This document shows, in pieces, positions 1 to 55,416 of a stretch of 64,000 nt of DNA. Where the stretch lies: positions 1 through 64,000 of IMG/VR virus record IMGVR_UViG_3300040801_004532, one strand, 5' to 3'. Position numbers and translations under genes: made by a program. The notes below the pieces were generated by a model that was given only the letters and a program-made list of their open reading frames with translations, was not told the DNA's origin and did not search any database. How positions within the stretch are numbered: the first letter of the stretch is position 1; each line of letters starts with the position of its first letter.

Positions 1-203
1 CCTGCTGTAACCTTGCATCCATTACTAACTCCTTCTACCGTAAATCCAGTTCCATCACCTCCAACAATTTGGCAGTCAAAAGGAGCTTGTCCCCCATCCA
101 CCTGTAAAATAGTTGATTCTCCATTATTAACTACCTCAGGTGAACCGCTATCAAACTCTGGTGGGAAGTATGTTCTTTTAAATGTTAGTGATATATTACC
201 CAT
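1..203 (-). CDS. Virion/tail-associated protein, 5' part only (paralog of 3687-4571)
   Basis: Minus-strand frame from ATG at 203 reads MGNISLTFKRTYFPPEFDSGSPEVV..., near-identical to the N-terminus of 3687-4571; runs off the window edge. Confidence 0.8.
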   Translation of the reverse strand, partial: MGNISLTFKRTYFPPEFDSGSPEVVNNGESTILQVDGGQAPFDCQIVGGDGTGFTVEGVSNGCKVTA

Positions 204-232
204 CTACAATATCTCTCCCTACAATCTGCTCA

Positions 233-1747
233 TTATGGACATCTCCACCTTTGGAAGTTGACAGAACAAAAATAACCAGAACTACAACCAACTTCTGTTG
301 CAGTTATACACCAATCTCCACAATATGAACAAATGCCTGGATTCAACCCACCTCCCTCTGCGCATGATTCTTGGAAACCGAAAGATCCACTTATACGACA
401 TGTGTATTGCACACGACAGCCAGGGTTATTATAATAGATCTGTTCTGCTCCAGGAGTGCAACCACCCGAGACACCACCATGACAACTACTCCACCCACCT
501 GAAGTACAACGAACAATTCCAAGAACAGTATTGCCACAAATATCTGTTACTGTAATCTGTGCTGCACCACAAGCAGATCCATTAGCATATAGAGTATTGG
601 TTTTTCCATAAGTTCTTAAATTTTCCAATGAAAAACCAGTTCCCGAAACAGACCAATCATAATATCCACAAGTACCTGTTGAATCAACTGCAACTGTTAC
701 ACCAATTTCATCATCACCTTGAGAAATTATATCAGCACTTATATCATTATCCCAATCTATAGCAATACATGAACTACAATCTACTCCGCCTACAGACCAA
801 CCAACAGATTGTCCCTGATCATCAGTACAAGTAACATCAACATAACCTGAAATACTCTCTCCTGCTGTTATGGAGAAACCATTTTCAGTATCATTAAATG
901 TAAAACCACCTCCATTTATTACTGCTTCACAATCAACTGGAGGCATTCCACCATCAACTGTATAATTAATAGTCTGCCCTGGTTCGATTGTTTCTGATTG
1001 TCCAGAAGGTATGGTTGGAGGAGAAAAAAGTGGGTACCCTGGATAATAATCATCTATATCATCAGGTCCCATTCCATAAGTTTTAACCATCCAATTTAAA
1101 AAATAACCATCCTGGTCAATCGGATCTGAAAATTGCACCCGAAAACCATCAAATCTTTTTTCAATTACCATTAGATCATAAGGAAAAGGACCACTTGAAT
1201 AATCTAATGAAAACTCTAAACTAGCTACAACTGCATATTTTAAAGTGGTCATTTCTTCAGAAAAAACAATATTAGCAGTTGTGTCTCCAGAAGCTATTTC
1301 CCATAGACCGTCTGTTACAATATATGCTGGGTTTAACTCTGAACCATCTATTCCAGATGATCCAGATGATCCAGATGTTCCACTTGTACCAATGACTCCA
1401 GATGATCCAGAAGTTCCTGATGTTTTTGATGTACCAGATGTACCAGATGTACCAGATGTACCAGATGTACCCCCACTTGTTCCAGATGTACCAGATGTAC
1501 CAGAAGACCCAGAATAGCCTGAAGAACCAGAAATTCCAGCCTCACATGATCCAGCTTTCTGTCTTACAGCGCATAAGGTTATGAATGTATCTGCTCGCGT
1601 ACTATCCAGACCATATGTTGGATCGCCAGAGATATTTAGATGTTGCCCATCATAATATATCTCCACTTCGTTGGAATTTTCGGTACGACCCATACGTACT
1701 CTTTTATTTGTTCCAACATATAGTTTTCCATTCTTAACCTTGGCCAT
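233..1747 (-). CDS. Tail fibre/adhesin-like protein: GTS triplet tract, shared beta domain, Cys-rich C-terminal tip
   Basis: 504 aa; (GTS/GSS)n tract; C-terminal half paralogous to 4594-6120 and 3687-4571; AGGAG SD. Confidence 0.7.
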   Translation of the reverse strand: MAKVKNGKLYVGTNKRVRMGRTENSNEVEIYYDGQHLNISGDPTYGLDSTRADTFITLCAVRQKAGSCEAGISGSSGYSGSSGTSGTSGTSGGTSGTSGTSGTSGTSKTSGTSGSSGVIGTSGTSGSSGSSGIDGSELNPAYIVTDGLWEIASGDTTANIVFSEEMTTLKYAVVASLEFSLDYSSGPFPYDLMVIEKRFDGFRVQFSDPIDQDGYFLNWMVKTYGMGPDDIDDYYPGYPLFSPPTIPSGQSETIEPGQTINYTVDGGMPPVDCEAVINGGGFTFNDTENGFSITAGESISGYVDVTCTDDQGQSVGWSVGGVDCSSCIAIDWDNDISADIISQGDDEIGVTVAVDSTGTCGYYDWSVSGTGFSLENLRTYGKTNTLYANGSACGAAQITVTDICGNTVLGIVRCTSGGWSSCHGGVSGGCTPGAEQIYYNNPGCRVQYTCRISGSFGFQESCAEGGGLNPGICSYCGDWCITATEVGCSSGYFCSVNFQRWRCP

Positions 1748-1756
1748 TAGTACTCC

Positions 1757-3676
1757 TTATGTATTTTCATTAAGGACAAAAACTCTACCTCTATATGGCA
1801 TTATATGACTACTCGGATCTCCTGGATAGCCAGTGCCTCGATATGAATTTGTAGTAACCCATAGATAAGAGTCAACTCCGTATCCTTCCTTTGGGTAAAC
1901 GGTTGCAGTTGCTATCCCAGTAAATAATCTATCAGGGTAATAATATGCAGCATCCCAGTCGGAAAAAAGATGTGCAGCAACTGGTGAATTTTTAACTCCA
2001 AACGTCATTGTTGAGAGATCATATACAAGAATTGTCGAACCTTGAGATCCTTGTACAGATCCACATACATATAACTTACCTTTATATGGTACTATTTTTT
2101 GTATATTACTGAAAGCAGGTTGTAAACTAATTGTAGGTTCAGCAACAATTTGCCAACTACCGACTCCATCATTCCACACACAGACCTTATCATATTGATC
2201 ATAACCAAGATAATCTCCAAACGCAACAAAAAGATACCCGTTAGCATTACATAGTGCTATTGGTCTCCATTTTGCAGACGCACTTCTGTCTGTATTAAAA
2301 TAAGGAGGAAGATAAGACCAACCGCCTCCGTCAGGATACCATGGTCCAAGAAAGTCACCTGCTGTTTCTGTGAATGAAAGTATAACATACAATGGTCCAT
2401 CCTCTGTAATTGGAGAATATTCCTGACCAGAAACAGTTTCTACCCCTGATAATGACGTATATATAGTTTCTCCTTGAGCATAACGTATCGCGTAGTTAGG
2501 ACCAATAACCCCATATGCATTTTCATCTGTATGAGTGACTATATATACACCTTCTCCAAATTGACGAAATCCACAAACAGTCCAATCTGGCTCTGCATAA
2601 TATGGTTGCCACATTCCAACCCAATATTGCATACTACCACCTAAAAATGGAGAAGTCATTAATGATCCATTAGCTTCATGTAAGTGAGTTCTAGCACCTG
2701 TACTGTGCATATCTCGATCTGTTGAAGTCAAAACACTAATTTCTCCACTTCCGGGATAAGTCCATATATCATGATCTGGGGATAAAACTGAGATAGCACT
2801 CCAGTCAGCGGCAAAATATAACGATCTTGGCGATCCTGCTGATTCACCTACTGCAGTAAATAATGGAGTATCCGCATAAAATGACCCAGATCCAAGCTGT
2901 TTAAATCCGGCTCCAGCTACAGCAGGCGGTGAAGAAAACTCAGGATAAGGTGGTGGAGGCGGAGGTGGAATAATATGGATATTCTCTGACTTTGCCACAT
3001 CTTCAACTAACCAATCAAAAACAAAAGCAGAGGAATCAATTGGTTGATTAAAAGCAACCTTAAAACCGTAGGATGTTTTATCAAATATTAAAAAGTTAAA
3101 TGTTGGGTATGGAACATTGGTCCCCCTGAAGTTTATCGATCCAGTTACAGAATAATATTCTACAATCCTTGGAGTTTCAAAAATAATCAACGATGTTGTA
3201 TCACCGGGATTGAGCTCCAACATTCCTGCTGTAACTATGTTTGTTGAATCGAATTGTGTTACTAATGCAGATGTGCCTGAGTTACCGCTACTACCTGAAG
3301 TACCCGAAGTTCCATCTGTAGCTGAAGTTCCGCTTGACCCTGAGGTTCCATCTATTCCACTAGTTCCTGATGAACCCGATGTCCCAGAAGAGCCACTTGT
3401 CCCACTTGTCCCACTAGATCCAGATGTTCCGCTTGTTCCACTAGTACCAGAAGAGCCAGATGTACCACTTGTCCCTGCACCGCCAGCCTTTACATACTCC
3501 TCAAAGACAGATCTAATAATAAAAGTGTTTTCATTAAGATCTTGTACTCCTGCTGTAGGCGCACCAGATATATTAATAGTTTCACCATCCCATTTAACGA
3601 TAACTTCATTGTTATCACCAAAAATAATGGCTTGGTTTGTTTTGATGTTTAGATTTCTATTTTTATATCTGGCCAT
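1757..3676 (-). CDS. Tail fibre/adhesin-like protein with GTS tract, poly-Pro linker and aromatic beta-rich C-terminus
   Basis: Start moved to ATG 3676 (MARYKNRNL) behind AGGAG; N-terminus resembles those of 233-1747 and 4594-6120. Confidence 0.7.
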   Translation of the reverse strand: MARYKNRNLNIKTNQAIIFGDNNEVIVKWDGETINISGAPTAGVQDLNENTFIIRSVFEEYVKAGGAGTSGTSGSSGTSGTSGTSGSSGTSGTSGSSGTSGSSGTSGIDGTSGSSGTSATDGTSGTSGSSGNSGTSALVTQFDSTNIVTAGMLELNPGDTTSLIIFETPRIVEYYSVTGSINFRGTNVPYPTFNFLIFDKTSYGFKVAFNQPIDSSAFVFDWLVEDVAKSENIHIIPPPPPPPYPEFSSPPAVAGAGFKQLGSGSFYADTPLFTAVGESAGSPRSLYFAADWSAISVLSPDHDIWTYPGSGEISVLTSTDRDMHSTGARTHLHEANGSLMTSPFLGGSMQYWVGMWQPYYAEPDWTVCGFRQFGEGVYIVTHTDENAYGVIGPNYAIRYAQGETIYTSLSGVETVSGQEYSPITEDGPLYVILSFTETAGDFLGPWYPDGGGWSYLPPYFNTDRSASAKWRPIALCNANGYLFVAFGDYLGYDQYDKVCVWNDGVGSWQIVAEPTISLQPAFSNIQKIVPYKGKLYVCGSVQGSQGSTILVYDLSTMTFGVKNSPVAAHLFSDWDAAYYYPDRLFTGIATATVYPKEGYGVDSYLWVTTNSYRGTGYPGDPSSHIMPYRGRVFVLNENT

Positions 3677-3686
3677 TAAATAACTC

Positions 3687-4571
3687 CTATTGTGGGCATC
3701 CCCACTTTTGCAATCCCGGATTAGCACCTGAAAAACCAGAATTATAATATCTACCAGTTTCACATCTTCCGCTTACTTGAGCAAATGGAGGATGACAATA
3801 AGATAGATAAGCTGTTGAACCATCTTCACATGAATATGCTGGATTGTTGCCTGCATTTTGACCACCACATCCCCCACAATATAAAGATCCACTATAGGCA
3901 TATCCGTACTTATATAACCCATCTGGAGAAGTTGCACTACGAGCTATCATACATGTATATACATATGATCTAGTATACGTCAAATTTGAGGTTGGAGTAC
4001 AAGTCAACCATGTACCAGAAGTACATTTAACTTCATGTATTACTTCATTACCACAGGCATCAGTTACAGTAACTTCCGCTGCGCCACAAGCGGATCCATT
4101 TGCATGAAGTGTATTAGTTGTCCCATATGTTCTTGTGTGTTCTAGTGAAAATCCAGTTCCTGAAACTGACCAATCATAATATCCACATGCTCCACCGTTA
4201 ATAGCAATTGTTGTTGAGTCATTTTGAGCAACAGAAGTTCCGCTTGTAATATCGTCCCATGTGATTTCTGTACATGAAGTACAATCTACACCTCCAACAG
4301 ACCATGTTCCAGTTGTATTTCCTTGGTTATCTGTGGCTTGAACTTTAATATAACCACTAATATTTTGTCCCGCAGTTACTCTACAACCAGTTTCTGTTGA
4401 CTTAACTGTAAAACCTGTACCCCCACCCCCAACATTTTGACAATTGAAAGGTGCCTGTCCTTCATTAATCAATAACTCTACGGATTCTCCAGATTCAACG
4501 GTTTGCGGCGATCCACCATCAAATTCTGGCGGAAAGTATGTTCTTTTAAATGTTAGTGATATATTTCCCAT
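3687..4571 (-). CDS. Virion protein with Ig-like repeats and Cys-rich variable tip
   Basis: 294 aa; shares CG(Y/F)YDWSVxGxGFSL...CTSG...WxCP with neighbours. Confidence 0.65.
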   Translation of the reverse strand: MGNISLTFKRTYFPPEFDGGSPQTVESGESVELLINEGQAPFNCQNVGGGGTGFTVKSTETGCRVTAGQNISGYIKVQATDNQGNTTGTWSVGGVDCTSCTEITWDDITSGTSVAQNDSTTIAINGGACGYYDWSVSGTGFSLEHTRTYGTTNTLHANGSACGAAEVTVTDACGNEVIHEVKCTSGTWLTCTPTSNLTYTRSYVYTCMIARSATSPDGLYKYGYAYSGSLYCGGCGGQNAGNNPAYSCEDGSTAYLSYCHPPFAQVSGRCETGRYYNSGFSGANPGLQKWGCPQ

Positions 4572-4593
4572 TTAACTCCTCTTAAATTTTAAA

Positions 4594-6120
4594 TTATGGA
4601 CAGCTCCATTTATAAATATCCATCCAATCAGGTCTTGCTGGCCAAGCACAATTATTCATTGAAACATCGCTATATCCATATTTTTCTAAGAATGGGGTTC
4701 TTCTATCAACTGTTTCACCATCTGGGCAAGTTAGAACATCTTGATCGAATATTCCAGGATCATCACACCCATTAACCTTAACAGATGTTAAGCTATACCA
4801 GCATGCCTGTGCTGTATTTCCACCTGTACAATTTGTACAACTTATAGCACAACCCGAAGGAGAACCGCAATTTATTTGATTTACAGTTCCACATTTAACC
4901 ATAGTACCTGATGTACATTTTATTTTTTCTGTAATAATATTTCCACATGCATCTTCTACAGTTACAGTTGCAATACCACAAGCACTACTACTTGAATATA
5001 GGGTGTTTGTGGTTCCGACTGTCCTTAAACTTCCTAATGAGAATCCCTCCCCTGTTACAGACCAATCATAAAATCCACAATTGGAGTTTGTTGAAGTTGA
5101 ATCAATCGCAATTGTTACTGAGTCATTTGTTCCAATGACAGAAGCACTTAAATCATGATCCCACTCCATAACAATACATGAACTACAATCAGTACCTCCT
5201 GCTCCCCAACTCCCAACATATCTTCCTGCATCGTCTGTTGCACCAACAGTTATATAACCAGATGCTCCCCCGGGGTCAGCAGTTAAGGTACAACCATTAG
5301 TATATGAACCAATTGTAAAACCACTTCCGCTACCAGATTCTTGATAGCAATTATATGGAGGAAGTCCACCATCAATTTCTAAATATATAGTCTCTCCTGG
5401 TTCAACTGAGTCAGGAGAGGTTTGTGAAAATTCTAAAGTTGGATTTCCAATTTGGTCATAGTCTTTTAAAAGAAAATCAATAATATATGTCTTATCAACT
5501 GGACCGTTTACCTTGATTTTAAAACCTGTTGTTGTCTTATCAAATACCAATGCCTTATAAAAAGTATATGGAGGATCCACTGCATAACATTGTGTTATAG
5601 ATACTGTATATTGATTATGAGGTCTTGGCGATGTAAAGGTTAGAGATGCGGTTGTATCTGATGAGGTTGTATCAAATACTAAAGCTCCAGCTAAAACTAT
5701 TAATGAACTTGAGTCTGAAGGAATAAACGATTCTCCGGATGTTCCTGATGTACCAGATGTTCCTGATGTTCCTGGATCTCCCGAAGTCCCACTCGTTCCA
5801 CTCGTTCCTGATGTTGACCCACTTGTTCCTGATGTGCCAGATGTTCCAGAAGATCCCGAAATTCCCGAAGATCCGCCAGTACCAGAAGTTCCTGATGATC
5901 CACTTGTACCCGATGTCCCCGATGTACCGGAAGGAGACCAATCATCCAAATCCTGTCTGGTTACAAACGTATTGCCTGCAGTTCCATCAATACCTGAAAC
6001 TGGAGTTTGATCTGTTCTTACGAAGTAATCATCATAATAAATTCTTCCTTGGTCATTATCACCAAGTTTAATATCTTCATCAGCTCCGAAGAACACATCG
6101 CCTTTTCTAAATTTTGGCAT
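4594..6120 (-). CDS. Tail fibre/adhesin-like protein (paralog of 233-1747)
   Basis: 508 aa; GTS tract; same domain order as 233-1747. Confidence 0.7.
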   Translation of the reverse strand: MPKFRKGDVFFGADEDIKLGDNDQGRIYYDDYFVRTDQTPVSGIDGTAGNTFVTRQDLDDWSPSGTSGTSGTSGSSGTSGTGGSSGISGSSGTSGTSGTSGSTSGTSGTSGTSGDPGTSGTSGTSGTSGESFIPSDSSSLIVLAGALVFDTTSSDTTASLTFTSPRPHNQYTVSITQCYAVDPPYTFYKALVFDKTTTGFKIKVNGPVDKTYIIDFLLKDYDQIGNPTLEFSQTSPDSVEPGETIYLEIDGGLPPYNCYQESGSGSGFTIGSYTNGCTLTADPGGASGYITVGATDDAGRYVGSWGAGGTDCSSCIVMEWDHDLSASVIGTNDSVTIAIDSTSTNSNCGFYDWSVTGEGFSLGSLRTVGTTNTLYSSSSACGIATVTVEDACGNIITEKIKCTSGTMVKCGTVNQINCGSPSGCAISCTNCTGGNTAQACWYSLTSVKVNGCDDPGIFDQDVLTCPDGETVDRRTPFLEKYGYSDVSMNNCAWPARPDWMDIYKWSCP

Positions 6121-6128
6121 TTATCTCC

Positions 6129-7427
6129 TTATCTTATAATAGACCATTCAAGAATATAATTTTCAGAATCAATTGGATTAGAAAATAGGACTGTAAATCC
6201 AGATGTTGTCTTTGATATAATTGCCATTGAATAGAACGAAATAGGATCATCAACTGTATTAACTAAAACTAAAGAATCAATGTTATAATTTTCATCTGCC
6301 TCTTCAGAATAAAATAAGATAGTTGCAGATGTTGAGTCAACTTCCAAAGGTCCTGCCCCAACTTTCTGATATCTAACTCTATTCCACCTTTCGCCAAGAT
6401 GTTTTATTTCAAGGACTCCAGTATGATCTCTTATTCCATAACCAGTAGCCCCAGCAGTATCTCCAAAATTTAAATATCCGTTTTCTTTAAAAAGAACTGA
6501 ATTTTCATTTGCTGAAGCAGAAGTTATTTTTATAGGTCTGTTTCCATTTATATCTACATACCAATCCGTATTTCCATAAAATGCCAATCCATAGTTAATA
6601 TGACCAAAGTTATTAGATGTAGCAAACGTATCTCCAAATTCAATTCCGTCGGTTGTTATTGATCCACCTGCGCCCCTTATTCCAGTTGAAACTTTATTAG
6701 CATCAATATCGCCACATCCAGTAACACTAGTTGTTCCATAGTTACATTGAATTCCAACAGTATTTGTATTTCCATTATCTCCAAATTTACAAGTACTTAC
6801 AGATAAAACATTTCCATAACTTAAAATACAAACACGGTTATCATTTTGGACTTTAACAGATAAATATGCAAATGCCACCCAGGAATTTTCTATAAAAAGT
6901 CCAACATCCCCCTCTGGTATTTCAATTAATACAGTATCTGGATCATAATTTTGACCAATTATGTAGATAGACCCCTCAGTTCTTCCTCTTATTTCAAATG
7001 TTTCTAAATATGTACCATCGGCTAAAAATATATATGCATAGTAACCATTAAGAAATCTTGGAACCTGTGTTAATGCATATGTTATTGTTGCCCAAGGAAG
7101 GGTTATAGTTCCTTCACCTGTTGAATCACTTCCTGTTGGAGAAACATAATAATATAAATCCTCTGATGCTCCAGCTTCAGTATCAATATATGTTTTAACG
7201 GCTTTTTCTGTTGGAACTGCAGTATCTGAGTTTCCTACTAATGTTCCATCAGTTGAAAATTCAGAAATGGCTGAACCAGAAATTAGAGAAAGACCTGATT
7301 GATCAAAGGTTCCAACAACGGACCCATCACTTTGTATTTCGATCTTTTTAGAATTATCGTCAACAATAACCTTTGTATCTAAGTCAAAAATCCTATTGAA
7401 GAAATTCCATCTGCGATCATAGGTCAT
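6129..7427 (-). CDS. Tail spike/fibre protein with probable beta-helix region
   Basis: One EFSTDGTL...AVKTYID repeat; YYVSPTGSDSTGEGT..PWATI..AL motif typical of beta-helix N-caps; C-terminal domain shared with the GTS proteins. Confidence 0.65.
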   Translation of the reverse strand: MTYDRRWNFFNRIFDLDTKVIVDDNSKKIEIQSDGSVVGTFDQSGLSLISGSAISEFSTDGTLVGNSDTAVPTEKAVKTYIDTEAGASEDLYYYVSPTGSDSTGEGTITLPWATITYALTQVPRFLNGYYAYIFLADGTYLETFEIRGRTEGSIYIIGQNYDPDTVLIEIPEGDVGLFIENSWVAFAYLSVKVQNDNRVCILSYGNVLSVSTCKFGDNGNTNTVGIQCNYGTTSVTGCGDIDANKVSTGIRGAGGSITTDGIEFGDTFATSNNFGHINYGLAFYGNTDWYVDINGNRPIKITSASANENSVLFKENGYLNFGDTAGATGYGIRDHTGVLEIKHLGERWNRVRYQKVGAGPLEVDSTSATILFYSEEADENYNIDSLVLVNTVDDPISFYSMAIISKTTSGFTVLFSNPIDSENYILEWSIIR

Positions 7428-7491: not shown

Positions 7492-10400
7492 TTAGATTAT
7501 GTAGAAATCACTTCCGTCGCTTACAAATGTATATGCTGAATTGTAAGCATCAATTGATTTAGAAGCAAGCCCATCAATTGTTCCCGGTGTTGTTGAAACA
7601 ATTACACTATTCGAATCAGAAGTAATTTTCTTAATTGTAATTTGCGCATCAACCCCTTCAAATAGATCAATATTAACGTCACCTGCTGTTGTATCAACAA
7701 GTAGAATTTCACCATTCACTGCTGTAGTATCTGAGCTAACATATTTAACTTCTCTAAGTGTGTCAATTGAGGTATCAACATATGTCTTAACTGCTTGCTC
7801 AGTCGGAACTGCAGAATCAGAGTTGTCAGTTAATGTTCCATCGGTTGAAAATTCATTTACAGTTGCTCCAGTTGATAAATATAAGCCAGTTGAATAGAGT
7901 GTAGCTGCTGCTTGAGTATCAACATAGAATCTGATATCTGGATTAGATTTTCCTCCTTCCCAAACGTTGATGAAGGTATTTGAGTCTGCTCTTACAAAAG
8001 TTCCGACTCCATCATTCTCAAATATAGTTGTACCCCCACGGAAAATTTTAAGGGATGGAGTTACTGAGTCATCTGCATCAAAATAAGTACTACCACTAAT
8101 TCCAAAAGTAGCACGAGATCCAGCATAAGCTGTTATATTAGTATCAGCTAATATATCTACATTTGCTCCTGTTTCAGTAGCATATAGATAAAGATATCCT
8201 GATGATCCTTCTAAATAAACATAAGTTTCATCCCCAGCTAATCCTAATCCAATCCAATCCTGTGAGTCAGTATCACAATAAATATAATTATTGCTTCCAG
8301 ATAGATTTGTATAATCACCAACATCAAAGAGAGAAACTCCATCACTTTGAACGAAAGATGTTGTAGCTGCTGCTCCAGTGGAGTCCACATAAAACATATA
8401 ATTAGGAGTTTGCCCTATTAAAATGTCTGGATTAGAAGCATCCACATATGCTTTAACAGCTTTTTCAGTTGGGATTGCACTATCTGAATTTCCAGACAAA
8501 GTCCCATCAGTTGAAAATTCATTTACAGTTGCTCCAGTTGTTAAAGTTAGACCAAACTCTGTAAATGTCGCAGCAACAACGCTTGATTCACTTACTGTAA
8601 TTATATTTGATGTTTGATCAATGGAAACATATGCTTCAGATTCATCACCAAGATTAATTCGTTCCTCATTTGCATCAAGAATTACTCTTGTATCAATATA
8701 ACCATATAGATATTCATCTGTAACTAATAATCTTCCTGCTGCTGATGCTTTTCCAATTCTTTGAGTTGAAGAATCAGGATCAAAATGAGCAACTTCAACT
8801 CCATCGGTTACAATTGTTACATAACCAGATGCTGTTCCATCATCTACAACTTCAACATATGAGTCACCTTCGTAAATTTTGTCTCTAGCAACTTGTCCTG
8901 TTGCTTGATCAACATAGGTTTTTACTGCTTTTTCAGTTGGAACTGCATCATCGGAGTTCCCTACTAATGTCCCATCAGTTGAAAATTCATTTATAGATGC
9001 CCCCGAGGCTAATGTCAGACCCTCAGAAGTGAATGTACCAACTGTAGATGCTGCAACATTCATAGTAATATATTCAGGGGCTACTTCAGCATCAGTTGCA
9101 CCAATTTCAATATAATTATTTGGATCATAAAAAACAGATGTAATTCCTCCAGCAATTTTCTCAAATGCTTTATCATTGCCTGAATAAAGGGAAATGCTTT
9201 CTGAAGCTGTAGAGTCCTGTCCAGTACTTATCTTTAAATAACTTCCTACATCTGTAGAACCAAAATAATTATAAGTATAATCTATATCCATGAAAACTTG
9301 CTCACTAAAACCGGTACCAACAGTGTAAGTAAGTTTTGCATTGTCTCCCGCAACAGAGGAATCAACTTTTATTTCTCCTCCGAGAGTTCCCAACCTAATA
9401 TTTGGATCACCACCTTCTGGATCATTTGCTTCAAAATAAGCACGACCTTCTAGAGCTGTACCCAAATAACCATAATCATACACCGTTAGGGTTATTCCGC
9501 CATAATTTGAATCCGCAGTAATAGAACCGTCAGCGGCTATATCTATCACAGCATCTGTTGCTGTAGCATAGATATAAGTATTACCATCCCCGTCTATATA
9601 ATAGTAAGACAAATCGTTTGCCGCTCCTATTCCTACCCATGTAGAACTTCTATAAAGATAAGGAACAGACCCTGTATTATTCGTATAATCCCCAGCATCA
9701 AAAATTGATGATCCATTAGTGATAATTGAACCTGATGTTACAGCCATCTCATTAGATGCACCAATGTTAAGTTGAATCTGTGTATCTGAAACTTCAATTC
9801 TTCCTGCTGCTGATGCTTTTCCAATTCTTTGAGTTGATGATGATGGATCAAAGTGTGCAACTTCAACTCCATCGGTTACAATAGTTACATAACCAGTAGA
9901 AGTTCCGTCATCTACAACTTCAACATAGGAGTCCCCTTCATAAATCTTATCTAAAGAAATCCCTGAAGTTGCATTATCTACATAGGTTTTTACTGCTTTT
10001 TCTGTAGGAATTACATTATCTGAATTTCCTAGTAATGTTCCGTCAATTGAAAACTCATTTACTGAAGTTCCAGATTGAAGTGAAACTCCAGAAGCAGCAA
10101 TTGTCATGACTCCGGTTGTAGCAATACTCATAGAAATTTGAGCGTCTGTTACTTCAATCCTTCCCGCACCGACTGCTTTACCAATTCTTTGTGTTGAAGC
10201 ATCTGGATCAAAATATGCAACTTGAACTCCATCAGTTACAATTTCAACATACCCAGTTGCAGTTCCATCATCACCAATTCTTACATATGAGTCACCACTG
10301 GCCATTGTAACTTCATCAAGAACGTTATCAATTGTAATATAAGCGTCACCAGCAGTGTCAAATCTCTTTTCAGTATCATTCCACCATGGAACTCTTAGAT

Positions 10401-11310
10401 TTACTGGAACATCTTCTCTAGTTGCAACCGCTTGTGTATCACCCACTTCCCCAATTCTGAATGTATCTGAGTCTTCCGAAAAGATAAATTGATAATTTGG
10501 TTCTGTGCCTCGATCTACTTCCATGCCAGCGGTTCCGGCTGTAACACCAGGACCTGTTTCGCCATCATTCACAACAATAATATTATCTGATGTAGTTACC
10601 TGTTGATTATGAATAACGAAGGTTGTTCCGTCAACAAACAGATCCCCGCTTATGGATACGTCTTGTGAGAAAACTGTTGATTCGCCATCTGTTCGTATAA
10701 CTTCTTCGCCATCAATTACTGTAGTTACATACCCTTCCCCAGTATCAACGACCTCAACATAAGAATCACCTTCTGAAATTTGATCTGTAGAAATATTGCC
10801 AATTTCTGTATCAACGTATGTTTTTACTGCTTGTTCTGTAGGAACTGCATCATCCGAGTCTCCAGATAAAGTTCCATCAGTTGAAAATTCATTGATTGAT
10901 GTTCCGCCCGCCAATGTTAATCCATCTGATGTCCATGTTCCAACTGTAGCTGTATTAATCACAACTTCAACATACGCAGTATTTGTACCGTCATCAACAA
11001 CCTGAACCCTTGAGTCATCTTGTGTAATTCTATCTGCCGCAAGAGAAGCAAATTTATTGTCAACGTATGTTTTTACTGCTTGTTCAGTAGGAACAGCATC
11101 ATCTGAATTTCCTATTAAAGTTCCATCAATTGTAAATTCATTAATAGAAGCACCATTTGCCAATGTTAAACCATCAGCATTAAATGTTGCAACTGTAGCG
11201 TTATCAATTTCGATTAAAGCTCGGCTATTTGATACATCGTCGATAACTCTGACTCTACTATCAGAGTCAAAAATTTGATCGAAAATGTTCCATCTTGGAC
11301 TATAAGCCAT
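7492..11310 (-). CDS. Long tail fibre-like structural protein
   Basis: 1272 aa; six copies of NEFxxDGTLxxxSDxx(V/I)PTExAVKxYVD; internal duplicated blocks. Confidence 0.75.
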   Translation of the reverse strand: MAYSPRWNIFDQIFDSDSRVRVIDDVSNSRALIEIDNATVATFNADGLTLANGASINEFTIDGTLIGNSDDAVPTEQAVKTYVDNKFASLAADRITQDDSRVQVVDDGTNTAYVEVVINTATVGTWTSDGLTLAGGTSINEFSTDGTLSGDSDDAVPTEQAVKTYVDTEIGNISTDQISEGDSYVEVVDTGEGYVTTVIDGEEVIRTDGESTVFSQDVSISGDLFVDGTTFVIHNQQVTTSDNIIVVNDGETGPGVTAGTAGMEVDRGTEPNYQFIFSEDSDTFRIGEVGDTQAVATREDVPVNLRVPWWNDTEKRFDTAGDAYITIDNVLDEVTMASGDSYVRIGDDGTATGYVEIVTDGVQVAYFDPDASTQRIGKAVGAGRIEVTDAQISMSIATTGVMTIAASGVSLQSGTSVNEFSIDGTLLGNSDNVIPTEKAVKTYVDNATSGISLDKIYEGDSYVEVVDDGTSTGYVTIVTDGVEVAHFDPSSSTQRIGKASAAGRIEVSDTQIQLNIGASNEMAVTSGSIITNGSSIFDAGDYTNNTGSVPYLYRSSTWVGIGAANDLSYYYIDGDGNTYIYATATDAVIDIAADGSITADSNYGGITLTVYDYGYLGTALEGRAYFEANDPEGGDPNIRLGTLGGEIKVDSSVAGDNAKLTYTVGTGFSEQVFMDIDYTYNYFGSTDVGSYLKISTGQDSTASESISLYSGNDKAFEKIAGGITSVFYDPNNYIEIGATDAEVAPEYITMNVAASTVGTFTSEGLTLASGASINEFSTDGTLVGNSDDAVPTEKAVKTYVDQATGQVARDKIYEGDSYVEVVDDGTASGYVTIVTDGVEVAHFDPDSSTQRIGKASAAGRLLVTDEYLYGYIDTRVILDANEERINLGDESEAYVSIDQTSNIITVSESSVVAATFTEFGLTLTTGATVNEFSTDGTLSGNSDSAIPTEKAVKAYVDASNPDILIGQTPNYMFYVDSTGAAATTSFVQSDGVSLFDVGDYTNLSGSNNYIYCDTDSQDWIGLGLAGDETYVYLEGSSGYLYLYATETGANVDILADTNITAYAGSRATFGISGSTYFDADDSVTPSLKIFRGGTTIFENDGVGTFVRADSNTFINVWEGGKSNPDIRFYVDTQAAATLYSTGLYLSTGATVNEFSTDGTLTDNSDSAVPTEQAVKTYVDTSIDTLREVKYVSSDTTAVNGEILLVDTTAGDVNIDLFEGVDAQITIKKITSDSNSVIVSTTPGTIDGLASKSIDAYNSAYTFVSDGSDFYII

Positions 11311-11370: not shown

Positions 11371-11958
11371 TTAGACTGCATAAAAATTCGATGCATCGCA
11401 TAAGAAAGTATAAGATTCATTCTCCTGACTAATTATAAATTGGCTATTCCCATCAACCAATCCTGAATTTCCTTGAACATAAACAACATTTGAATCTGAA
11501 GTTATTTTCTTTATAATATATCGTCCATTCCCTGTGTTTATAAGGGTAATGGTTACATCACCATTGGTAGTATCAACAAGGAGAGCTTCTGCGTCAACTG
11601 CGTTGTCATTTGAACTTACATGTCTTAAAGTATATCCGGCTGAAATCGACGCGATTTGGGTGTCAACATAAGTCTTAACCGCCCGTTCCGTAGGAACTGC
11701 AGTATCTGAGTTTCCTACTAATGTTCCGTCTGTTGAGAACTCAGCAATAGTAGATCCGGTTGGTAAAGAAAGGGTAGTAAACTTGCCACTACTTGGATTT
11801 GTTGCCCCGATTGGTCTTGGAGATGCAAACAAATCCTGAGTAGTGATGTTCATTGTTAGATCGGGGTCTTCGCTTACATCTACTATTGCTAACAGATCAG
11901 CATCATCAGCTTGAGTTAATGGATCAAGTTCTGAAATCCTTTTGTCATCATCTGCCAT
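11371..11958 (-). CDS. Short fibre-related structural protein
   Basis: One EFSTDGTL repeat; C-terminal LLVDTTxGDV...KKITSDSN domain shared with 7492-11310. Confidence 0.65.
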   Translation of the reverse strand: MADDDKRISELDPLTQADDADLLAIVDVSEDPDLTMNITTQDLFASPRPIGATNPSSGKFTTLSLPTGSTIAEFSTDGTLVGNSDTAVPTERAVKTYVDTQIASISAGYTLRHVSSNDNAVDAEALLVDTTNGDVTITLINTGNGRYIIKKITSDSNVVYVQGNSGLVDGNSQFIISQENESYTFLCDASNFYAV

Positions 11959-29970: not shown

Positions 29971-31422
29971 TTATGCACCAATACTTAAAGTTGCAATCCC
30001 GGATGCCCTAACAAGAGCAGTTGCGTATCTACTTAGGATTGTCAAGCTTGGTGTATAGCCAAGTGGATACGGATGCAAAACTGCTGGCACATATGGGCTG
30101 TAAAAGTAAATAGCCTTTAGTTCTTCAACTGGTTTGTACACCATCAACATTGTTCCTTGTGTTACGACTGCTGATGTAAGAACTTTCCATTTTCCACCAG
30201 CAACTGTGGCTGAACGGTAACCTAGATCACCATCAACTGAGCTTGTTCCTGTATAGTTGAAGGTTTGTAGATCTTCAAGAATAGCAACATCTAGTGGGTT
30301 AGCTAGAATTGTATTTCCAGCTTCGATGTTGGTATCTGTATAGATCTGACCTGATAGTTCGTTCAATGGAACAATGATGTTCTCATGCCAATACTTGGTT
30401 CCCCATGTATATGTAACAGGTGGGGTACGGTTGAATGTCTTTTGATGTGTTGCAGAGTTCAAGCGAGTATTGGCTGTGATTAGAGCATTGATGATTTCTC
30501 TGTCAATGTCTAGCGCTACTTGCTGACCAAGAATGTTTACGATTTCAGCTTGCATTGAAACATCAAATAGAGCTCTCATGTCTTGCTCCATGTTGATTGT
30601 CCAATTTGCTGAGATCTGGCGGTCTCTTGCATATAGACGAATTTTGTCTACATTAAGAGTTACGCTTGGGTTAATTCTGTTTTCTTCTAGTGAAGTGGTT
30701 ACCTGGAAACGAGCATATAGAACTGTTCCAGTTGTACTAGAAATGTCTACAGTACCATTTAGGAAATCAACTTTACCAGAGATAACGTCAGCGGAACCAC
30801 CAACTGTTACACTTGATGAAAAGTGTCCTTCAACAGCAGGTACAATTGAAACGTCTGTCCATGCAGTACCGTCTGTAGAAACACCAGTAATTTCGAAGTC
30901 TCTTTCAAGGTGAGCCTGTGTGCTATTAAGACCAATTACACCAAGAACATCATATGACGAACTTGGAACAGCCATTGAAGCAGAAACAGGTGTACCTATT
31001 GCGGCACCTTGTGAAATATCTGTGCTTGTTACGGGTGCATCATACTGAGAAGGATTGTTTGATGGACTAAACTTGGCTTTAATAAACGCCTTAACTGTTT
31101 CAGGTTTGTCCATTGGTGAAACTGTTACGGCTTCTTTTGCAACTAGTTTCGGATAAAATACACGAAGAATGGGTAGAGTTAATGTTTCATATGGGTTGAT
31201 CTGAAACATTGAGTTCTCTAGAAGGTTAATTCTTGTGTTTTCCGCTAGCTGAACAAAAGCTGCCCGGTCTTTTTTGCTCTCGATTGATTCCGCTAGACCT
31301 TGTACATACGCATCAAAAGCAGCGTCATCAACAAGAACGGCTTTTAGATTACCTGGCTTTGATGGATCAATACCAGACATCTTTTTAGTGGTCGCATAGA
31401 CCTCTTGTAGCAACTCTTTCAT
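29971..31422 (-). CDS. Major capsid protein (T4 gp23-like)
   Basis: VSPM, R.ISA.WT..MEQD, EI...L...V...IDREII, FYSPYVP, SRYA motifs; head-gene context. Confidence 0.9.
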   Translation of the reverse strand: MKELLQEVYATTKKMSGIDPSKPGNLKAVLVDDAAFDAYVQGLAESIESKKDRAAFVQLAENTRINLLENSMFQINPYETLTLPILRVFYPKLVAKEAVTVSPMDKPETVKAFIKAKFSPSNNPSQYDAPVTSTDISQGAAIGTPVSASMAVPSSSYDVLGVIGLNSTQAHLERDFEITGVSTDGTAWTDVSIVPAVEGHFSSSVTVGGSADVISGKVDFLNGTVDISSTTGTVLYARFQVTTSLEENRINPSVTLNVDKIRLYARDRQISANWTINMEQDMRALFDVSMQAEIVNILGQQVALDIDREIINALITANTRLNSATHQKTFNRTPPVTYTWGTKYWHENIIVPLNELSGQIYTDTNIEAGNTILANPLDVAILEDLQTFNYTGTSSVDGDLGYRSATVAGGKWKVLTSAVVTQGTMLMVYKPVEELKAIYFYSPYVPAVLHPYPLGYTPSLTILSRYATALVRASGIATLSIGA

Positions 31423-34807: not shown

Positions 34808-36730
34808 TTAGAATGCTGCTCCTCCAAAGCCTCCTCCTGCTCCACCTAAACCGCCCATATCATCTTCATCTTTTTTAGATGGATCAAGCGATTGCTCAAC
34901 ATTTTGGTCAATATTATACTTCTTGATTTCATCCCAATCAAAATGAGATAAGTATTTCTTTTTGGCATATTCTTTTGGAATTCCGATTCGATCAAGACTT
35001 TCAATTAGACCAACAAGCTCATTCATGTATCTTGCCTCTCGTTCATATTGTAGAGATTTTGGTGCAGGAAGATTAACTTCGACGTTATCAAATATTTGTA
35101 GTGCCTCGTCTGGATCTATAATCTCAAAAACCTTTTCTAATAGATCTCTAATCTGCATACTGATATATTTTTGATGTCCAATTACAGTTCTTGCAAATAG
35201 AATATTCTCTTCACTTAATGCTGCCTTATTTGAAAGGTTTTCTTCTATTCCAATAAAACTAGGCGGAATACCCCAAGAGGCTGTTAATTGATCTCGCATA
35301 AATTTTAACTCATCTGTTTTACTTCTAACATCAACATTGCCTTCATTAAATGTACTAATATCAACAAAAGGTTTTCCATCCTTTTGTGGAATGTAAACAT
35401 CTTCGAACGTTGTAATCATACTTGGAATTGTATCAACAGTTCCAAAGCTATCAAGACTAACCTTTCTTTTTCTAAACTCTTCTTTCATCTGTTCAATAGC
35501 TTTTCTTGCATCACGAGGCAAACCAATTTCAACAGCAATCTTTCTTTTCTCTGTTGATCTCGACAATCTTTGAACTGCTAATGCAGTTTCAAGAGCAATT
35601 AAAACTTTAGCCGAATACTGTGAAGAATCAAACACTGACTCCCCATATGGATAATATTTTGTAGATGGAATTTGAAAATGAGTCATCTTGTCCGGCGGAA
35701 CATATCTGATCTCTAGTGCTTGAGTTGGATCAGAATGTTGAATCATATAGACAATAATATCTTTAAGTTCCTGATTATCTTTAAACTCGCCCATCTGTGG
35801 AATTTTCTTTTCAAGATTCCTTAAAATCGACAGACAAATATTGTTTACAGCTTCGTCTTCCAAATTCGTTCCTACGATATTCATTCCCCTAAAAGTAGGG
35901 AATACTAAATATCCAAAACAAACTGGGAACAATGAACTCTGTAGTTTAACAATTGAACTGGGTTTATGAAAAACTAAATGTATATTTGAAACCTTTACCT
36001 TTTTACTTGTATCATTTTGTTCCGAAAAAGATGAATAGTCAATCTTTATATTTAATGATCTATCCTTTTTTCCTTCTTTAAATGTTTCATTCCAAACGGA
36101 CAGATCTCCATTATTTATTTTATTTTGAATGTGGTCACGATATGCGGTTGTTTCACTTAGCATTGATTTGCTTGTAAGAGCAATCTTTGGAGAGGCAATC
36201 TCGCAGAAGAAATCGCCATATAATAGCGTATTTCTAACAACTATATCTAGTCGCTTTTCAAGCCCAATTTCTTTTATTACTTCTTTGACTCGTTTAACTC
36301 TTGACTCGGCAGATTCTTCATCCTCAATATAGCTAGTTGGTTTAACATCAAGCGATACTTTTGTAATATCATCTGGTGAAAGAATATTATCAACAAGAAC
36401 TGCCAACGCTCTATGGGCATAGTTAATATTTGAAATGATGGCTTCATACGTCTTATAACGCATCAACCTAGCGGCTTGACCAAAAGCAGCAGGACCAGCT
36501 TGGGATTGTGAAAATATCCCGCCTGCTGAAAGACCAACGCCAGTTGTTGATTTCGAAATTACAGCTCTAACTAAATCAATATATCCATTTCTTCCACTGT
36601 GGGATTTGTATGTAACAATATCCTTGACAGCTTTATCTAGAGCTGTATCAATTTTCTGAGTTTTCGTTCCTACGACATTCGACTTAAGCTGTGTAAATAA
36701 ATCTGCTAGCTTTTTATTTTCTGGCATCAA
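34808..36730 (-). CDS. Portal protein (T4 gp20-like)
   Basis: LYGDFF, ETALAVQRLSRSTEKR, EDVYIP, L...WGIPPS, FAR motifs. Confidence 0.9.
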   Translation of the reverse strand: MMPENKKLADLFTQLKSNVVGTKTQKIDTALDKAVKDIVTYKSHSGRNGYIDLVRAVISKSTTGVGLSAGGIFSQSQAGPAAFGQAARLMRYKTYEAIISNINYAHRALAVLVDNILSPDDITKVSLDVKPTSYIEDEESAESRVKRVKEVIKEIGLEKRLDIVVRNTLLYGDFFCEIASPKIALTSKSMLSETTAYRDHIQNKINNGDLSVWNETFKEGKKDRSLNIKIDYSSFSEQNDTSKKVKVSNIHLVFHKPSSIVKLQSSLFPVCFGYLVFPTFRGMNIVGTNLEDEAVNNICLSILRNLEKKIPQMGEFKDNQELKDIIVYMIQHSDPTQALEIRYVPPDKMTHFQIPSTKYYPYGESVFDSSQYSAKVLIALETALAVQRLSRSTEKRKIAVEIGLPRDARKAIEQMKEEFRKRKVSLDSFGTVDTIPSMITTFEDVYIPQKDGKPFVDISTFNEGNVDVRSKTDELKFMRDQLTASWGIPPSFIGIEENLSNKAALSEENILFARTVIGHQKYISMQIRDLLEKVFEIIDPDEALQIFDNVEVNLPAPKSLQYEREARYMNELVGLIESLDRIGIPKEYAKKKYLSHFDWDEIKKYNIDQNVEQSLDPSKKDEDDMGGLGGAGGGFGGAAF

Positions 36731-42708: not shown

Positions 42709-43140
42709 TCAAATACCCCCCACCCTCCCCAATTCTGTCATTCCCTTTGAGTATGGACTTGTGGCAGCACCACTAGTTCCCGAAATCCCAGCAAATCCAA
42801 TTGATCCAGATACTCCCGATGGTCCAACACATCCACTTGTTCCAGATGTACCCATATAACCAGAAGACCCATTATAATCTGGAGGTTCAACTCCAGTAGC
42901 TTGTTCAATCCAATCTAATTTTCTTTTTCCCCAACATTTAGGGCAAATTGAAATATTCCTACATATTGATCCATCCTTCCTCGCTAATTCAATTGCTCCA
43001 CGCCCACCACAAATGGGGCACACAATTTCTCCCAAATCTTCATCTAGTTCAATTTCGCTTATTCCAGCACCATTGAAAGGGGTGCGTTTAGAAATAACTT
43101 CACCATTTAGATATTTTTTAAAATTATCTAATATTCCCAT
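42709..43140 (-). CDS. DnaJ-type zinc-finger protein with GTS-like tail
   Basis: CPICGGRG...CPKCWGKRKLDWI followed by Gly-X-Y triplets. Confidence 0.65.
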   Translation of the reverse strand: MGILDNFKKYLNGEVISKRTPFNGAGISEIELDEDLGEIVCPICGGRGAIELARKDGSICRNISICPKCWGKRKLDWIEQATGVEPPDYNGSSGYMGTSGTSGCVGPSGVSGSIGFAGISGTSGAATSPYSKGMTELGRVGGI

Positions 43141-49154: not shown

Positions 49155-49174
49155 CTATATATATTAATAAGTGA
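49155..49174 (+). promoter_or_regulatory. Putative early promoter
   Basis: CTATATATATTAATAAGTGA. Confidence 0.55.
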
Positions 49175-49221
49175 AAGTAGGTTGGGCGCCTAATATTTAT
49201 TACCGAAGAAAGGAGAACAGC

Positions 49222-54501: not shown

Positions 54502-54558
54502 TTATATTCGAACCCTAAATTATTTTAGAACAAAAAAATAAAAGGGGTTCGACTATAA
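54502..54558 (+). promoter_or_regulatory. RBS-sequestering hairpin with late promoter motif in its loop
   Basis: TTATA-T-TCGAACCCT pairs with GGGGTTCGA-C-TATAA; loop contains TTTAGAACAAAA. Confidence 0.65.
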
Positions 54559-55392: not shown

Positions 55393-55416
55393 AATCAAAT
55401 GAAAGTGAAAACAAAA

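What the first reader, a model, noticed from the sequence alone, without database searches (positions are those of the whole stretch)
1..6120. Paralogous fibre genes with a constant scaffold and divergent Cys-rich tips
Seen: 233-1747, 3687-4571 and 4594-6120 share a scaffold (..CG(Y/F)YDWSVxGxGFSL..TNTL..ACG.A..TV.D.CGN....CTSG). After CTSG the last ~80-105 aa are unrelated and Cys-rich, but all end in WxCP. The gene pair 4594-6120 + 3687-4571 is repeated as 233-1747 + (<1-203). Inference: an adhesin repertoire whose tips are exchanged by recombination at the CTSG boundary. The Cys density is unusual for virion proteins folded in the cytoplasm.
Basis: partly seen in the sequence, partly recalled or inferred. 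Interest (0 to 1): 0.6.

Follow-up and report, generated by a model that had tools for sequence, protein, structure and literature searches.

The report
Jumbo-phage fibre genes with swappable tips
A large uncultivated phage carries several fibre genes that share two Ig-like domains but end in different cysteine-rich tips of about 100 residues, and relatives show these tips were replaced wholesale by ordinary recombination; the tip-bearing module belongs to a large protein family that has never been described.

Summary
Genes 233-1747, 3687-4571 and 4594-6120, plus a fragment at 3-203 cut by the contig end, share a scaffold: two predicted Ig-like domains ending in the residues CTSG. Each then carries an 87-108 aa Cys-rich tip ending in W-x-C-P. 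The tips show no detectable sequence similarity to each other.

The window is the start of a 248-kb tailed-phage record.

An orthologue of 233-1747 on an ENA metagenome contig is 82% identical in DNA over 1.24 kb. Similarity ends about five codons before CTSG and resumes at the next gene. Other relatives are mosaics with breakpoints at other domain junctions as well.

Across the wider family, 27 of 32 protein pairs with bodies at least 60% identical have tips with no significant similarity. Some tips are more alike than their bodies.

The held DNA contains no reverse transcriptase, serine or tyrosine recombinase, template repeat or silent cassette. Exchange is therefore ordinary lateral recombination, not programmed diversification.

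The Ig-plus-tip module defines a family of at least 1,687 clusters. It has no Pfam model, no PDB relative and no match in 50,697 deposited phage genomes.

The tip fold and the chemical state of its cysteines remain unknown. A receptor-binding role is inferred, not shown.

The parts
3..203 (-). Gene D: the first 67 codons of a second short-form gene (start of Ig1), cut by the contig end. It is the orthologue of P0003 (L005 gene 3).
   Evidence: 70% aa identity to the 3687-4571 N-terminus; 84% nt identity to L005:2560-2762; Shine-Dalgarno AGGGAGAG
233..1747 (-). Gene A, long form, 504 aa: N-terminal part, collagen-like G-X-Y repeats (about 1343-1537), mid domain (about 1082-1336), Ig1 (about 767-1021), Ig2 (497-766), tip.
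236..496 (-). Tip of A: 87 aa, 11 Cys, ends WRCP. It is a singleton by sequence and is replaced by an unrelated 105-aa tip in the orthologue L005 gene 2.
497..508 (-). CTSG codons of A. DNA similarity to the orthologue ends about 16 nt upstream, at 524.
530..670 (-). 141-nt repeat D3 (also at 4047-4187 and 4939-5079): the conserved 3' part of Ig2, ending 22 nt before CTSG in all three genes. It is a candidate homology anchor on the upstream side of each tip.
1757..3676 (-). Gene E, 639 aa. It has a collagen-like fibre and the same mid domain, but an unrelated C-terminal domain of about 400 aa with no Pfam hit. It separates the two gene pairs.
3687..4571 (-). Gene B, short form, 294 aa: Ig1 (about 4272-4538), Ig2 (4014-4271, CTSG at 4014-4025) and tip. 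It has its own strong Shine-Dalgarno sequence, AAGAGGAG.
3690..4013 (-). Tip of B: 108 aa, 8 Cys, ends WGCPQ. The same tip type occurs in P0002, in L005 gene 1 (a long form) and in P0005 (a different N-terminal architecture).
4594..6120 (-). Gene C, long form, 508 aa: collagen-like repeats (about 5728-5934), mid domain, Ig1, Ig2 (CTSG at 4906-4917), tip.
4597..4905 (-). Tip of C: 103 aa, 10 Cys, ends WSCP. It is a singleton by sequence.
115..206 (-). Repeat D6 (also at 4483-4574, 79% identity with a near-perfect block of about 39 nt): the conserved 5' end of the two short genes. It is a candidate homology anchor on the downstream side of the long-gene tips.

Best explanation
Positions 1-6120 are part of the host-recognition (fibre) module of an uncultivated tailed jumbo phage.

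Architecture. The region encodes a set of modular fibre proteins. Three are long proteins (A, C, E), presumably trimeric, with collagen-like repeats. Two or more are short proteins (B, D). A, B, C and D end in the same module: two Ig-like beta-sandwich domains that act as a rigid spacer, followed by a terminal knob of about 90-110 residues. The ends of the knob are conserved: C-T-S-G-x-W..C at the start and W-x-C at the C-terminus. Its Cys-rich interior is hypervariable.

Function (inferred). The knob is the ligand-binding surface. Carrying several different knobs gives the virion several binding specificities.

Origin of the diversity. No dedicated diversifying machine is involved. Instead, lateral homologous or illegitimate recombination between phage lineages replaces whole tips, and sometimes Ig2+tip or Ig1+Ig2+tip. 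The conserved coding sequence on either side of each tip serves as the crossover anchor: the 3' part of Ig2 upstream, and the conserved 5' end of the next gene downstream.

Shown versus inferred.
- Shown: paralogy, domain architecture, mosaic breakpoints, family-wide discordance between tip and body, and absence of RT, recombinases and template repeats in the held DNA.
- Inferred: presence in the virion, receptor binding, trimer state, disulfide bonding, and the recombination route.
For: Phage context. The window holds a major head protein, portal, DnaB-like helicase and DNA polymerase. The record is 248 kb and is classed as a virus.

Fibre character. There are Collagen Pfam hits and tail-fibre PHROG hits. 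The adjacent upstream genes 6129-7427, 7492-11310 and 11371-11958 hit tail-fibre phrog_9851.

Scaffold. AlphaFold2 models residues 15-190 of B as two beta sandwiches, with pLDDT 84-98 over most of that range. Foldseek matches them to the tandem Ig-like domains of intimin, SraP, LigA and cadherins, and to phage Ig/Big_2 proteins.

Clasp. The strand just after CTSG and the last strand are modelled with confidence in two independent models, while the interior is below pLDDT 50. W-x-C ends 165 of 170 family tips, and W and C are invariant columns.

Tip replacement.
- A versus L005 gene 2: 82% nt identity over 1243 nt and 88% aa identity to residue 417. The tip beyond is unrelated and of different length. 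Similarity is 84% again in the next gene.
- P0002 (short form) versus L005 gene 1 (long form): nt identity is 0.5-0.65 in Ig1, then 0.83-0.93 through Ig2 and the tip.
- L005 gene 1 is a three-way mosaic: E-like mid domain, C-like Ig1, and P0002-like Ig2+tip.
- Family-wide, 27 of 32 non-identical pairs with bodies >=60% identical have no significant tip similarity. Conversely, some tips are 69-93% identical on bodies only 34-73% identical.
- Contigs of a freshwater-sediment run cover the bodies of A, E and C at 85-92% identity but leave the tips uncovered.

No programmed system. PF00078, PF00239 and PF00589 are absent from the 248 kb. There is no second copy of any tip in DNA or protein. All genes are on one strand. 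No RT is present in four complete genomes that carry family members.

Tail-module position. In contigs of about 50 kb, family members sit directly after P22-type portal ... SU10-type adaptor plus a gene of about 805 aa.
Against: - There is no proteome, structure or host, so virion location and receptor binding are untested. The proteins could be head fibres or whiskers rather than tail fibres.
- The tip fold could not be predicted (pLDDT <50), so a binding-knob role rests on position and variability alone.
- About 21% of the genome is missing by CheckV's estimate, so a reverse transcriptase or recombinase could lie in the unseen part.
- Only one true orthologue pair with a swapped tip was found for this phage's own genes.
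- The Logan contig gaps over the tips are weak evidence.
- Within this genome the paralogues are old, with synonymous sites near saturation. Nothing shows ongoing exchange among them.
- Cys positions are not conserved even within one tip type (8, 5 and 6 Cys in the B-type tips). This sits uneasily with a fixed disulfide framework.
Confidence: 0.6

Rival explanations
1. The tips diverged in place by fast point mutation and indels under diversifying selection, with no recombination. On this view the sharp boundary only reflects different constraint on Ig2 and on the tip.
For: All tips keep the same end features: a first Cys soon after CTSG and a terminal W-x-C. A tip profile links 76 of 170 family tips, so many tips are divergent homologues. 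B versus P0002 shows graded divergence in both body and tip.
Against: Between A and its orthologue, DNA identity drops from about 0.8 to noise within a few codons and returns to 84% in the next gene. Tips that are 93%, 91% and 69% identical sit on bodies only 63%, 73% and 34% identical. L005 gene 1 is a three-part mosaic.
Confidence: 0.1
2. The tips are diversified by a programmed system encoded in the missing ~21% of the genome: a diversity-generating retroelement, an invertible segment or shufflon, or gene conversion from silent cassettes.
For: The record is estimated at 79% complete, and the locus touches the contig end, so neighbouring DNA is unseen. C-terminal variable regions on phage fibres are the classic targets of such systems (own knowledge: BPP-1 Mtd, Mu G segment, P1 C segment).
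Against: The 248 kb held contains no RT, no serine or tyrosine recombinase, no template-like repeat and no extra tip copy. The tips differ in length and in Cys pattern, unlike adenine-directed DGR variation at fixed length. All genes are co-oriented, and the inverted repeats found are short, imperfect and do not flank any tip. Four complete genomes carrying family members have no RT.
Confidence: 0.05
3. The proteins are not receptor-binding tail fibres. They could be capsid or neck decoration fibres (hairs or whiskers) that mediate loose adherence to surfaces or polymers, or non-virion proteins. The short forms could be assembly factors for the long forms.
For: Ig-like domains are common on phage capsid decoration proteins, and the BFVD matches include head and decoration proteins. 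The short forms lack collagen repeats and any obvious anchor domain. No baseplate gene was identified next to the locus.
Against: The locus is contiguous with three genes that hit tail-fibre phrog_9851. Family members in podovirus-like contigs follow the adaptor and a gene of about 805 aa in the tail module. Wholesale tip replacement is the pattern expected of specificity determinants.
Confidence: 0.2

Closest known systems
T-even phage long-tail-fibre adhesins (gp37 tip and gp38; modular determinants of host range, e.g. PMC3157838, abstract seen)
   Same: A distal, C-terminal specificity element built from conserved framing motifs around hypervariable segments. It has a mosaic history of exchange between phages. 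Gene pairs consist of a long fibre gene followed by a small gene.
   Different: There is no sequence or predicted-fold relation. gp38 uses glycine-rich motifs and no cysteines. Here the variable part is a Cys-rich tail of about 100 aa fused behind two Ig-like domains. Whether the short form binds the long form is unknown.
Diversity-generating retroelement targets (Bordetella phage BPP-1 Mtd and relatives; own knowledge)
   Same: The variable region lies at the extreme C-terminus of a phage fibre protein on a constant scaffold.
   Different: There is no reverse transcriptase and no template repeat. The variation involves length, indels and Cys pattern, not adenine-specific substitutions. No C-type lectin fold was detected.
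Invertible tail-fibre segments (Mu G segment with Gin, P1 C segment with Cin; own knowledge)
   Same: Alternative C-terminal fibre parts are joined to a constant N-terminal part at a fixed boundary, with a small accessory gene after each.
   Different: There is no invertase and there are no inverted crossover sites. All alternative copies are complete genes on one strand, each with its own ribosome-binding site.
Phage structural proteins with Ig-like (Big_2 / I-set type) domains and collagen-like tail fibres (PHROGs 5073, 366, 1806)
   Same: Collagen G-X-Y repeats (Pfam PF01391). The predicted beta sandwiches match Big_2-like domains of intimin, invasin and LigA, the lambda and T5 tail tube proteins, and the SU10 tail, with VIA-align Z of 7.4-9 and 75-84 residues aligned.
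   Different: The Ig2 domain does not reach any Pfam Ig model. The Cys-rich terminal knob has no counterpart in those families.

Membership tests
Diversity-generating retroelement (DGR) target | A reverse transcriptase gene in the same element | tested here: not met
   PF00078 is absent from the 248-kb record, with positive controls ringing. It is also absent from 5 records carrying family members, 4 of them complete. The record is only about 79% complete.
Diversity-generating retroelement (DGR) target | A template repeat nearly identical to the variable region, differing at adenines | tested here: not met
   blastn (word size 7) and tblastn of the three tips against the whole record find only the tips themselves.
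Invertible-segment / shufflon tail-fibre switch | A site-specific recombinase (serine invertase or tyrosine recombinase) | tested here: not met
   PF00239 and PF00589 are absent, with controls positive.
Invertible-segment / shufflon tail-fibre switch | Alternative 3' segments in opposite orientation flanked by inverted crossover sites | tested here: not met
   All genes are on the minus strand. Only three short, imperfect inverted repeats were found, and none flanks a tip.
Collagen-like phage fibre | Uninterrupted G-X-Y repeats sufficient for a triple helix | tested here: met
   G-X-Y runs of 24-54 residues occur in A, C and E. PF01391 E-values are 5.7e-6, 1.2e-5 and 8.6e-10, and only E exceeds the gathering score. 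B and D have none.
Bacterial Ig-like (Big_2-type) domain | Beta-sandwich fold of about 85 aa matching solved Big_2/intimin-type domains | tested here: met
   AlphaFold2 pLDDT is above 90 for these domains. Foldseek probability is 1.0 to intimin D00-D0, SraP and LigA. VIA-align Z is 8-9 with rmsd 2.0-2.7 over 78-84 residues.
Bacterial Ig-like (Big_2-type) domain | A match to the Pfam sequence model (PF02368 or a related model) | tested here: not met
   There was no Pfam hit for B at E<=0.01, and none of 66 family members hit an Ig model. The domain is therefore Ig-like by fold only.
Uncharacterised 'Ig2 + Cys-rich W-x-C tail' family (defined here) | The conserved domain of about 84 aa (W.VSGTGF.L ... 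TNTL ... ACG.A.[IV]TV ... C[TS][ST]G) followed by a C-terminal tail of 70-160 aa ending in W-x-C | tested here: met
   All three complete genes match. There are 1,687 cluster representatives at E<=1e-3. In 170 members the tails are 69-159 aa, and 165 of 170 end in W-x-C.
Virion receptor-binding protein | Presence in the virion and binding to a host surface receptor | not testable with these tools
   No isolate, proteome or host is available. The support is purely positional.

The most novel reading that the evidence does not exclude
The Ig2 domain plus the Cys-rich tail closed by a W-x-C clasp may be a previously undescribed, widespread class of phage receptor-binding module. It comprises at least 1,687 clusters at 50% identity. 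It has no Pfam model and no PDB relative, and it is absent from 50,697 deposited phage genomes.

In this reading, a disulfide-stabilised (or metal-stabilised) knob with fixed ends tolerates almost unlimited sequence replacement, working as a protein-engineering-like framework for specificity. This jumbo phage would be unusual in fusing the module to collagen-like fibres and in carrying at least four different copies.

The strong excess of odd Cys counts in family tips (140 of 170) would then mean that one tip Cys pairs with the Cys of CTSG.
Probability: 0.35. Interest if true: 0.65.

Novelty: new variant of a known kind. Interest (0 to 1): 0.45.

Why it matters
Modular exchange of receptor-binding tips is the accepted way in which phages change hosts, so the mechanism here is not new.

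The module itself is undescribed. It is abundant in environmental viromes and has very clean exchange boundaries and fixed ends. If the knob is the binding element, it offers three things:
- a compact, naturally swappable specificity cassette of about 100 aa;
- a marker for finding host-range determinants in uncultivated podovirus-like and jumbo phages;
- a test case for how Cys-rich extracellular-type domains are made by viruses that assemble in a reducing cytoplasm.

Tried and rejected
- Megablast of 1-6200 against deposited phages found nothing. tblastn of B and of a typical member (P0026) against the same collection also found nothing.
- The search for related loci with A in IMG/VR, and with the A/orthologue alignment in JGI metagenomes, found nothing.
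- The search for homologous proteins with the whole of A was swamped by collagen repeats and was useless. Restricting the query to residues 138-420 gave only 13 hits and oddly missed the known orthologue.
- A PDB profile search gave no hit.
- ESM Atlas look-alikes gave only weak Ig-like leads, with scores around 0.79, below the trust level.
- AlphaFold2 failed on the tip interior for both B (145-sequence alignment) and a typical member, P0025 (66 sequences). No tip fold is reported, and the fold searches only tested the Ig domains.
- A profile built from the dominant tip cluster does not reach the window's tips, which score 2-4 bits.
- Looked for a phage-encoded route to disulfides. No Erv1/ALR (the control for this family did not ring anywhere, so this is uninformative), DsbA or thioredoxin was found.
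- Tested for recent gene conversion between the window's paralogues at fourfold sites. There was no signal.
- The joints reported by read laying between paralogous segments (for example 920>4047) come from low-likeness contig pieces across repeats and were not interpreted.


Full report
**Setting.** The window is the first 64 kb of a 248,136-bp record that IMG/VR classes as a linear virus, about 79% complete by CheckV. It encodes a major head protein (29971-31422), a portal (34808-36730), a DnaB-like helicase and a DNA polymerase, so it is a tailed jumbo phage. Every gene from 1 to about 14.5 kb is on the minus strand. No deposited phage resembles the region at DNA level. The only public run holding similar DNA is a freshwater-sediment metagenome.

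**Check of the observation.** I use these labels:
- A = 233-1747 (504 aa)
- B = 3687-4571 (294 aa)
- C = 4594-6120 (508 aa)
- D = 3-203 (67 codons, cut by the contig end)
- E = 1757-3676 (639 aa). The listed 668-aa ORF starts too early; the ATG at 3676 has an AGGAG ribosome-binding site.

B matches A, C and D at E = 1.9e-54, 1.6e-49 and 1.9e-27. The quoted motifs, including CTSG, are present in A, B and C.

The tails after CTSG are 87, 108 and 103 aa, with 11, 8 and 10 Cys. They end in WRCP, WGCPQ and WSCP. The genome-wide median Cys content of 275 ORFs is 1.4%, against 7.4-12.6% in the tips. A dozen other ORFs in the genome also have Cys-dense stretches.

DNA repeats D3, D4, D6 and D7 confirm that C+B and A+D are a duplicated pair, with E between them. 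B and D have their own Shine-Dalgarno sequences.

**Anatomy.**
- A, C and E begin with a short N-terminal part, followed by G-X-Y collagen-like repeats (Pfam PF01391, tail-fibre PHROGs).
- Next comes a mid domain of about 85 aa. This domain also forms the C-terminus of the neighbouring 432-aa fibre-like protein, 6129-7427 (E = 1e-9).
- A and C then continue with the part that B and D consist of alone.
- AlphaFold2 on B with a 145-sequence alignment gives two beta sandwiches, with pLDDT 84-98 over most of residues 15-190.
- Foldseek and VIA-align match these to tandem Ig-like domains of intimin, invasin, SraP and LigA, to S-layer proteins, and to Ig domains of phage tail and head proteins.
- No Pfam Ig model is reached. 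The scaffold is therefore Ig-like by fold only.
- The tip interior is not predictable (pLDDT <50). However, the strand just after CTSG and the final strand carrying W-x-C are confident, both in B and in an independent model of a typical family member.
- I infer that the two ends of the tip come together as a clasp and that the variable interior is an excursion between them. I could not inspect coordinates, so this is inference.

**The wider family.**
- A profile of B plus 12 relatives finds 1,687 representatives of 50%-identity clusters at E <= 1e-3, and 1,130 at E <= 1e-10.
- None of 66 members tested has a Pfam match, apart from one SprB repeat.
- The profile hits nothing in the PDB.
- tblastn of B and of a typical member finds nothing in 50,697 deposited phage genomes.
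- The conserved unit is the second Ig-like domain, about 84 aa, present in one to six copies per protein. It is always followed by a C-terminal tail.
- In 170 members the tail is 69-159 aa (median 110) with a median of 11 Cys (9.4% Cys). It ends in W-x-C in 165 of 170. It holds an odd number of Cys in 140 of 170 (binomial p = 3e-18).
- Thirty-nine independently fetched loci (35 from IMG/VR, 4 fetched by protein look-up) show the same features, nearly always as a single gene per locus of 6-13 kb around the match. Only one locus has two copies in tandem.
- In contigs of about 50 kb, the gene follows a P22-type portal, an SU10-type adaptor and a gene of about 805 aa. That is a tail-module position.
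- This phage is unusual in two ways: it fuses the module to collagen-like fibres, and it carries at least four copies.

**Are the tips exchanged?**
- A 3,956-bp ENA contig (L005) carries an orthologue of A followed by an orthologue of D.
- Its DNA is 82% identical to window 1766-524 over 1,243 nt. The CTSG codons are at 508-497, so similarity ends about five codons upstream of them. Similarity returns at 84% from the start codon of the next gene.
- At protein level the two are 88% identical up to residue 417. They then carry unrelated tips of 87 and 105 aa.
- A second case has a different breakpoint. The short protein P0002 and the long protein L005 gene 1 are only 0.5-0.65 identical in DNA through Ig1, but 0.83-0.93 identical through Ig2 and the tip.
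- L005 gene 1 as a whole joins an E-like mid domain, a C-like Ig1 and a P0002-like Ig2+tip.
- The B tip type recurs in P0002 and L005 gene 1. It also recurs in P0005, which has a quite different N-terminal architecture.
- Across 211 family proteins, 32 distinct non-identical pairs have bodies >=60% identical over >=150 aa. Of these, 27 have no significant tip similarity, most with no BLASTP hit at E <= 10. One such pair has bodies 94% identical.
- Conversely, tips 93%, 91% and 69% identical sit on bodies 63%, 73% and 34% identical.
- Only 164 of 14,365 tip pairs are detectably similar.
- Contigs from the freshwater-sediment run cover the bodies of A, E and C at 85-92% identity, with zero depth over the tips. 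This is consistent with replacement but weak, because the data are assembled contigs.

**How are they exchanged?**
- The 248 kb held has no reverse transcriptase, serine recombinase or tyrosine recombinase, with positive controls in the control genomes.
- No second copy of any tip exists in DNA or protein.
- No inverted repeats flank a tip.
- Four complete genomes carrying family members also lack a reverse transcriptase.
- The tips differ in length and in Cys pattern, which is unlike DGR variation.
- Each long-gene tip is bracketed by conserved sequence. Upstream is the 141-nt block D3, which ends 22 nt before CTSG in all three genes. Downstream is the conserved 5' end of the short gene, D6.
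- I therefore favour ordinary recombination between co-infecting or related phages, anchored in these conserved flanks and at other domain junctions. This route is inferred from the breakpoints and was not observed.
- Within this genome the paralogues are old. Identity at fourfold-degenerate sites is 0.38-0.67 and is no higher in Ig2 than in Ig1. Nothing indicates recent intragenomic conversion.

**The cysteines.**
- The density is real, and the family-wide excess of odd counts suggests that one tip Cys pairs with a Cys outside the tip, most simply the one in CTSG. That would argue for disulfides.
- Three points count against a fixed framework. The window's own tips have 11, 8 and 10 Cys. This clade has a fourth Cys in Ig2, so total parity is inconsistent. 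Homologous B-type tips have 8, 5 and 6 Cys at partly different positions.
- The held DNA encodes no DsbA or thioredoxin. The Erv1 search was uninformative.
- None of the proteins has an evident signal peptide (my own reading of the N-termini, not tested with a tool).
- Oxidation after lysis, or metal binding, both remain possible.

**Comparison with known systems.**
- Functionally the locus resembles the modular tail-fibre tips of T-even phages: framing motifs around hypervariable segments, and mosaic exchange (PMC3157838, abstract only). It also resembles multi-fibre jumbo phages (own knowledge).
- It is not a DGR target or an invertible-segment system. The defining parts of both were tested and not met.
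- It contains collagen-like and Ig-like elements that are common in phage fibres.
- The Ig2-plus-Cys-rich-tail module is not covered by any described family that I could test.

**Verdict.**
- A fibre or adhesin repertoire is plausible.
- Tip replacement at the CTSG junction is demonstrated between lineages.
- Exchange also uses other junctions.
- No dedicated diversification machinery is present.
- Virion location, receptor binding, tip fold and Cys chemistry remain open.

I rate this a new variant of a known kind, of moderate interest.

Noticed in passing
window 6129-7427, 7492-11310, 11371-11958 (minus strand): Three further fibre-like genes lie upstream. They share an N-terminus (M.Y..RWN.F..IFD) and a repeated motif, S/TD.AVPTEKAVKTYVD: six copies in the 1272-aa protein and one in the 432-aa protein. 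All three hit tail-fibre phrog_9851.
   Followed up: partly
window 6132-6431 and the mid domains of A (about 1082-1336), C and E: A domain of about 85 aa (..GF.V.F..PID...Y...W) ends the 432-aa protein and sits between the collagen repeats and the distal part in A, C and E (BLASTP E=1e-9). It looks like a shared module, perhaps for trimerisation or as a junction. No Pfam hit.
   Followed up: partly
window 1757-2899 (C-terminal ~380 aa of gene E); L006:1084-2067: Gene E carries a distal domain unrelated to the Ig+tip module and with no Pfam hit. In the relative L006, a separate 328-aa gene after the short-form gene has faint Kelch/propeller hits. Whether the two are related was not tested.
   Followed up: no
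window 42709-43140 (minus strand): A small 143-aa ORF far from the fibre locus combines a CxxC-type zinc-ribbon-like N-terminus (weak hits) with a short collagen-like repeat.
   Followed up: no
window 49171-50043, 54558-55328, 55312-55872; also G000 67347-67679, 230390-230734, 240296-240598: Several other ORFs in this phage have Cys-dense stretches (8-10 Cys within 90 aa, or 8-9% Cys overall). High Cys content is therefore not unique to the fibre tips in this genome.
   Followed up: no
L020:1838-4435 and 4442-7051 (IMG/VR contig 3300035698_013164): This is the only other locus with two tandem family genes (866 and 870 aa). Their bodies are 66% identical and their tips 46% identical, a smaller-scale version of the paralogous repertoire seen here.
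   Followed up: no
L007:4228-11707: In a groundwater contig, the family gene lies four genes upstream of a giant gene (2888 aa or more) with an ART-PolyVal domain, typical of polyvalent virion proteins of podovirus-like phages.
   Followed up: no
window 1 (contig start): The record begins inside gene D, so the fibre locus continues into unsequenced DNA. The number of tip-bearing genes (four seen) is a lower bound.
   Followed up: yes
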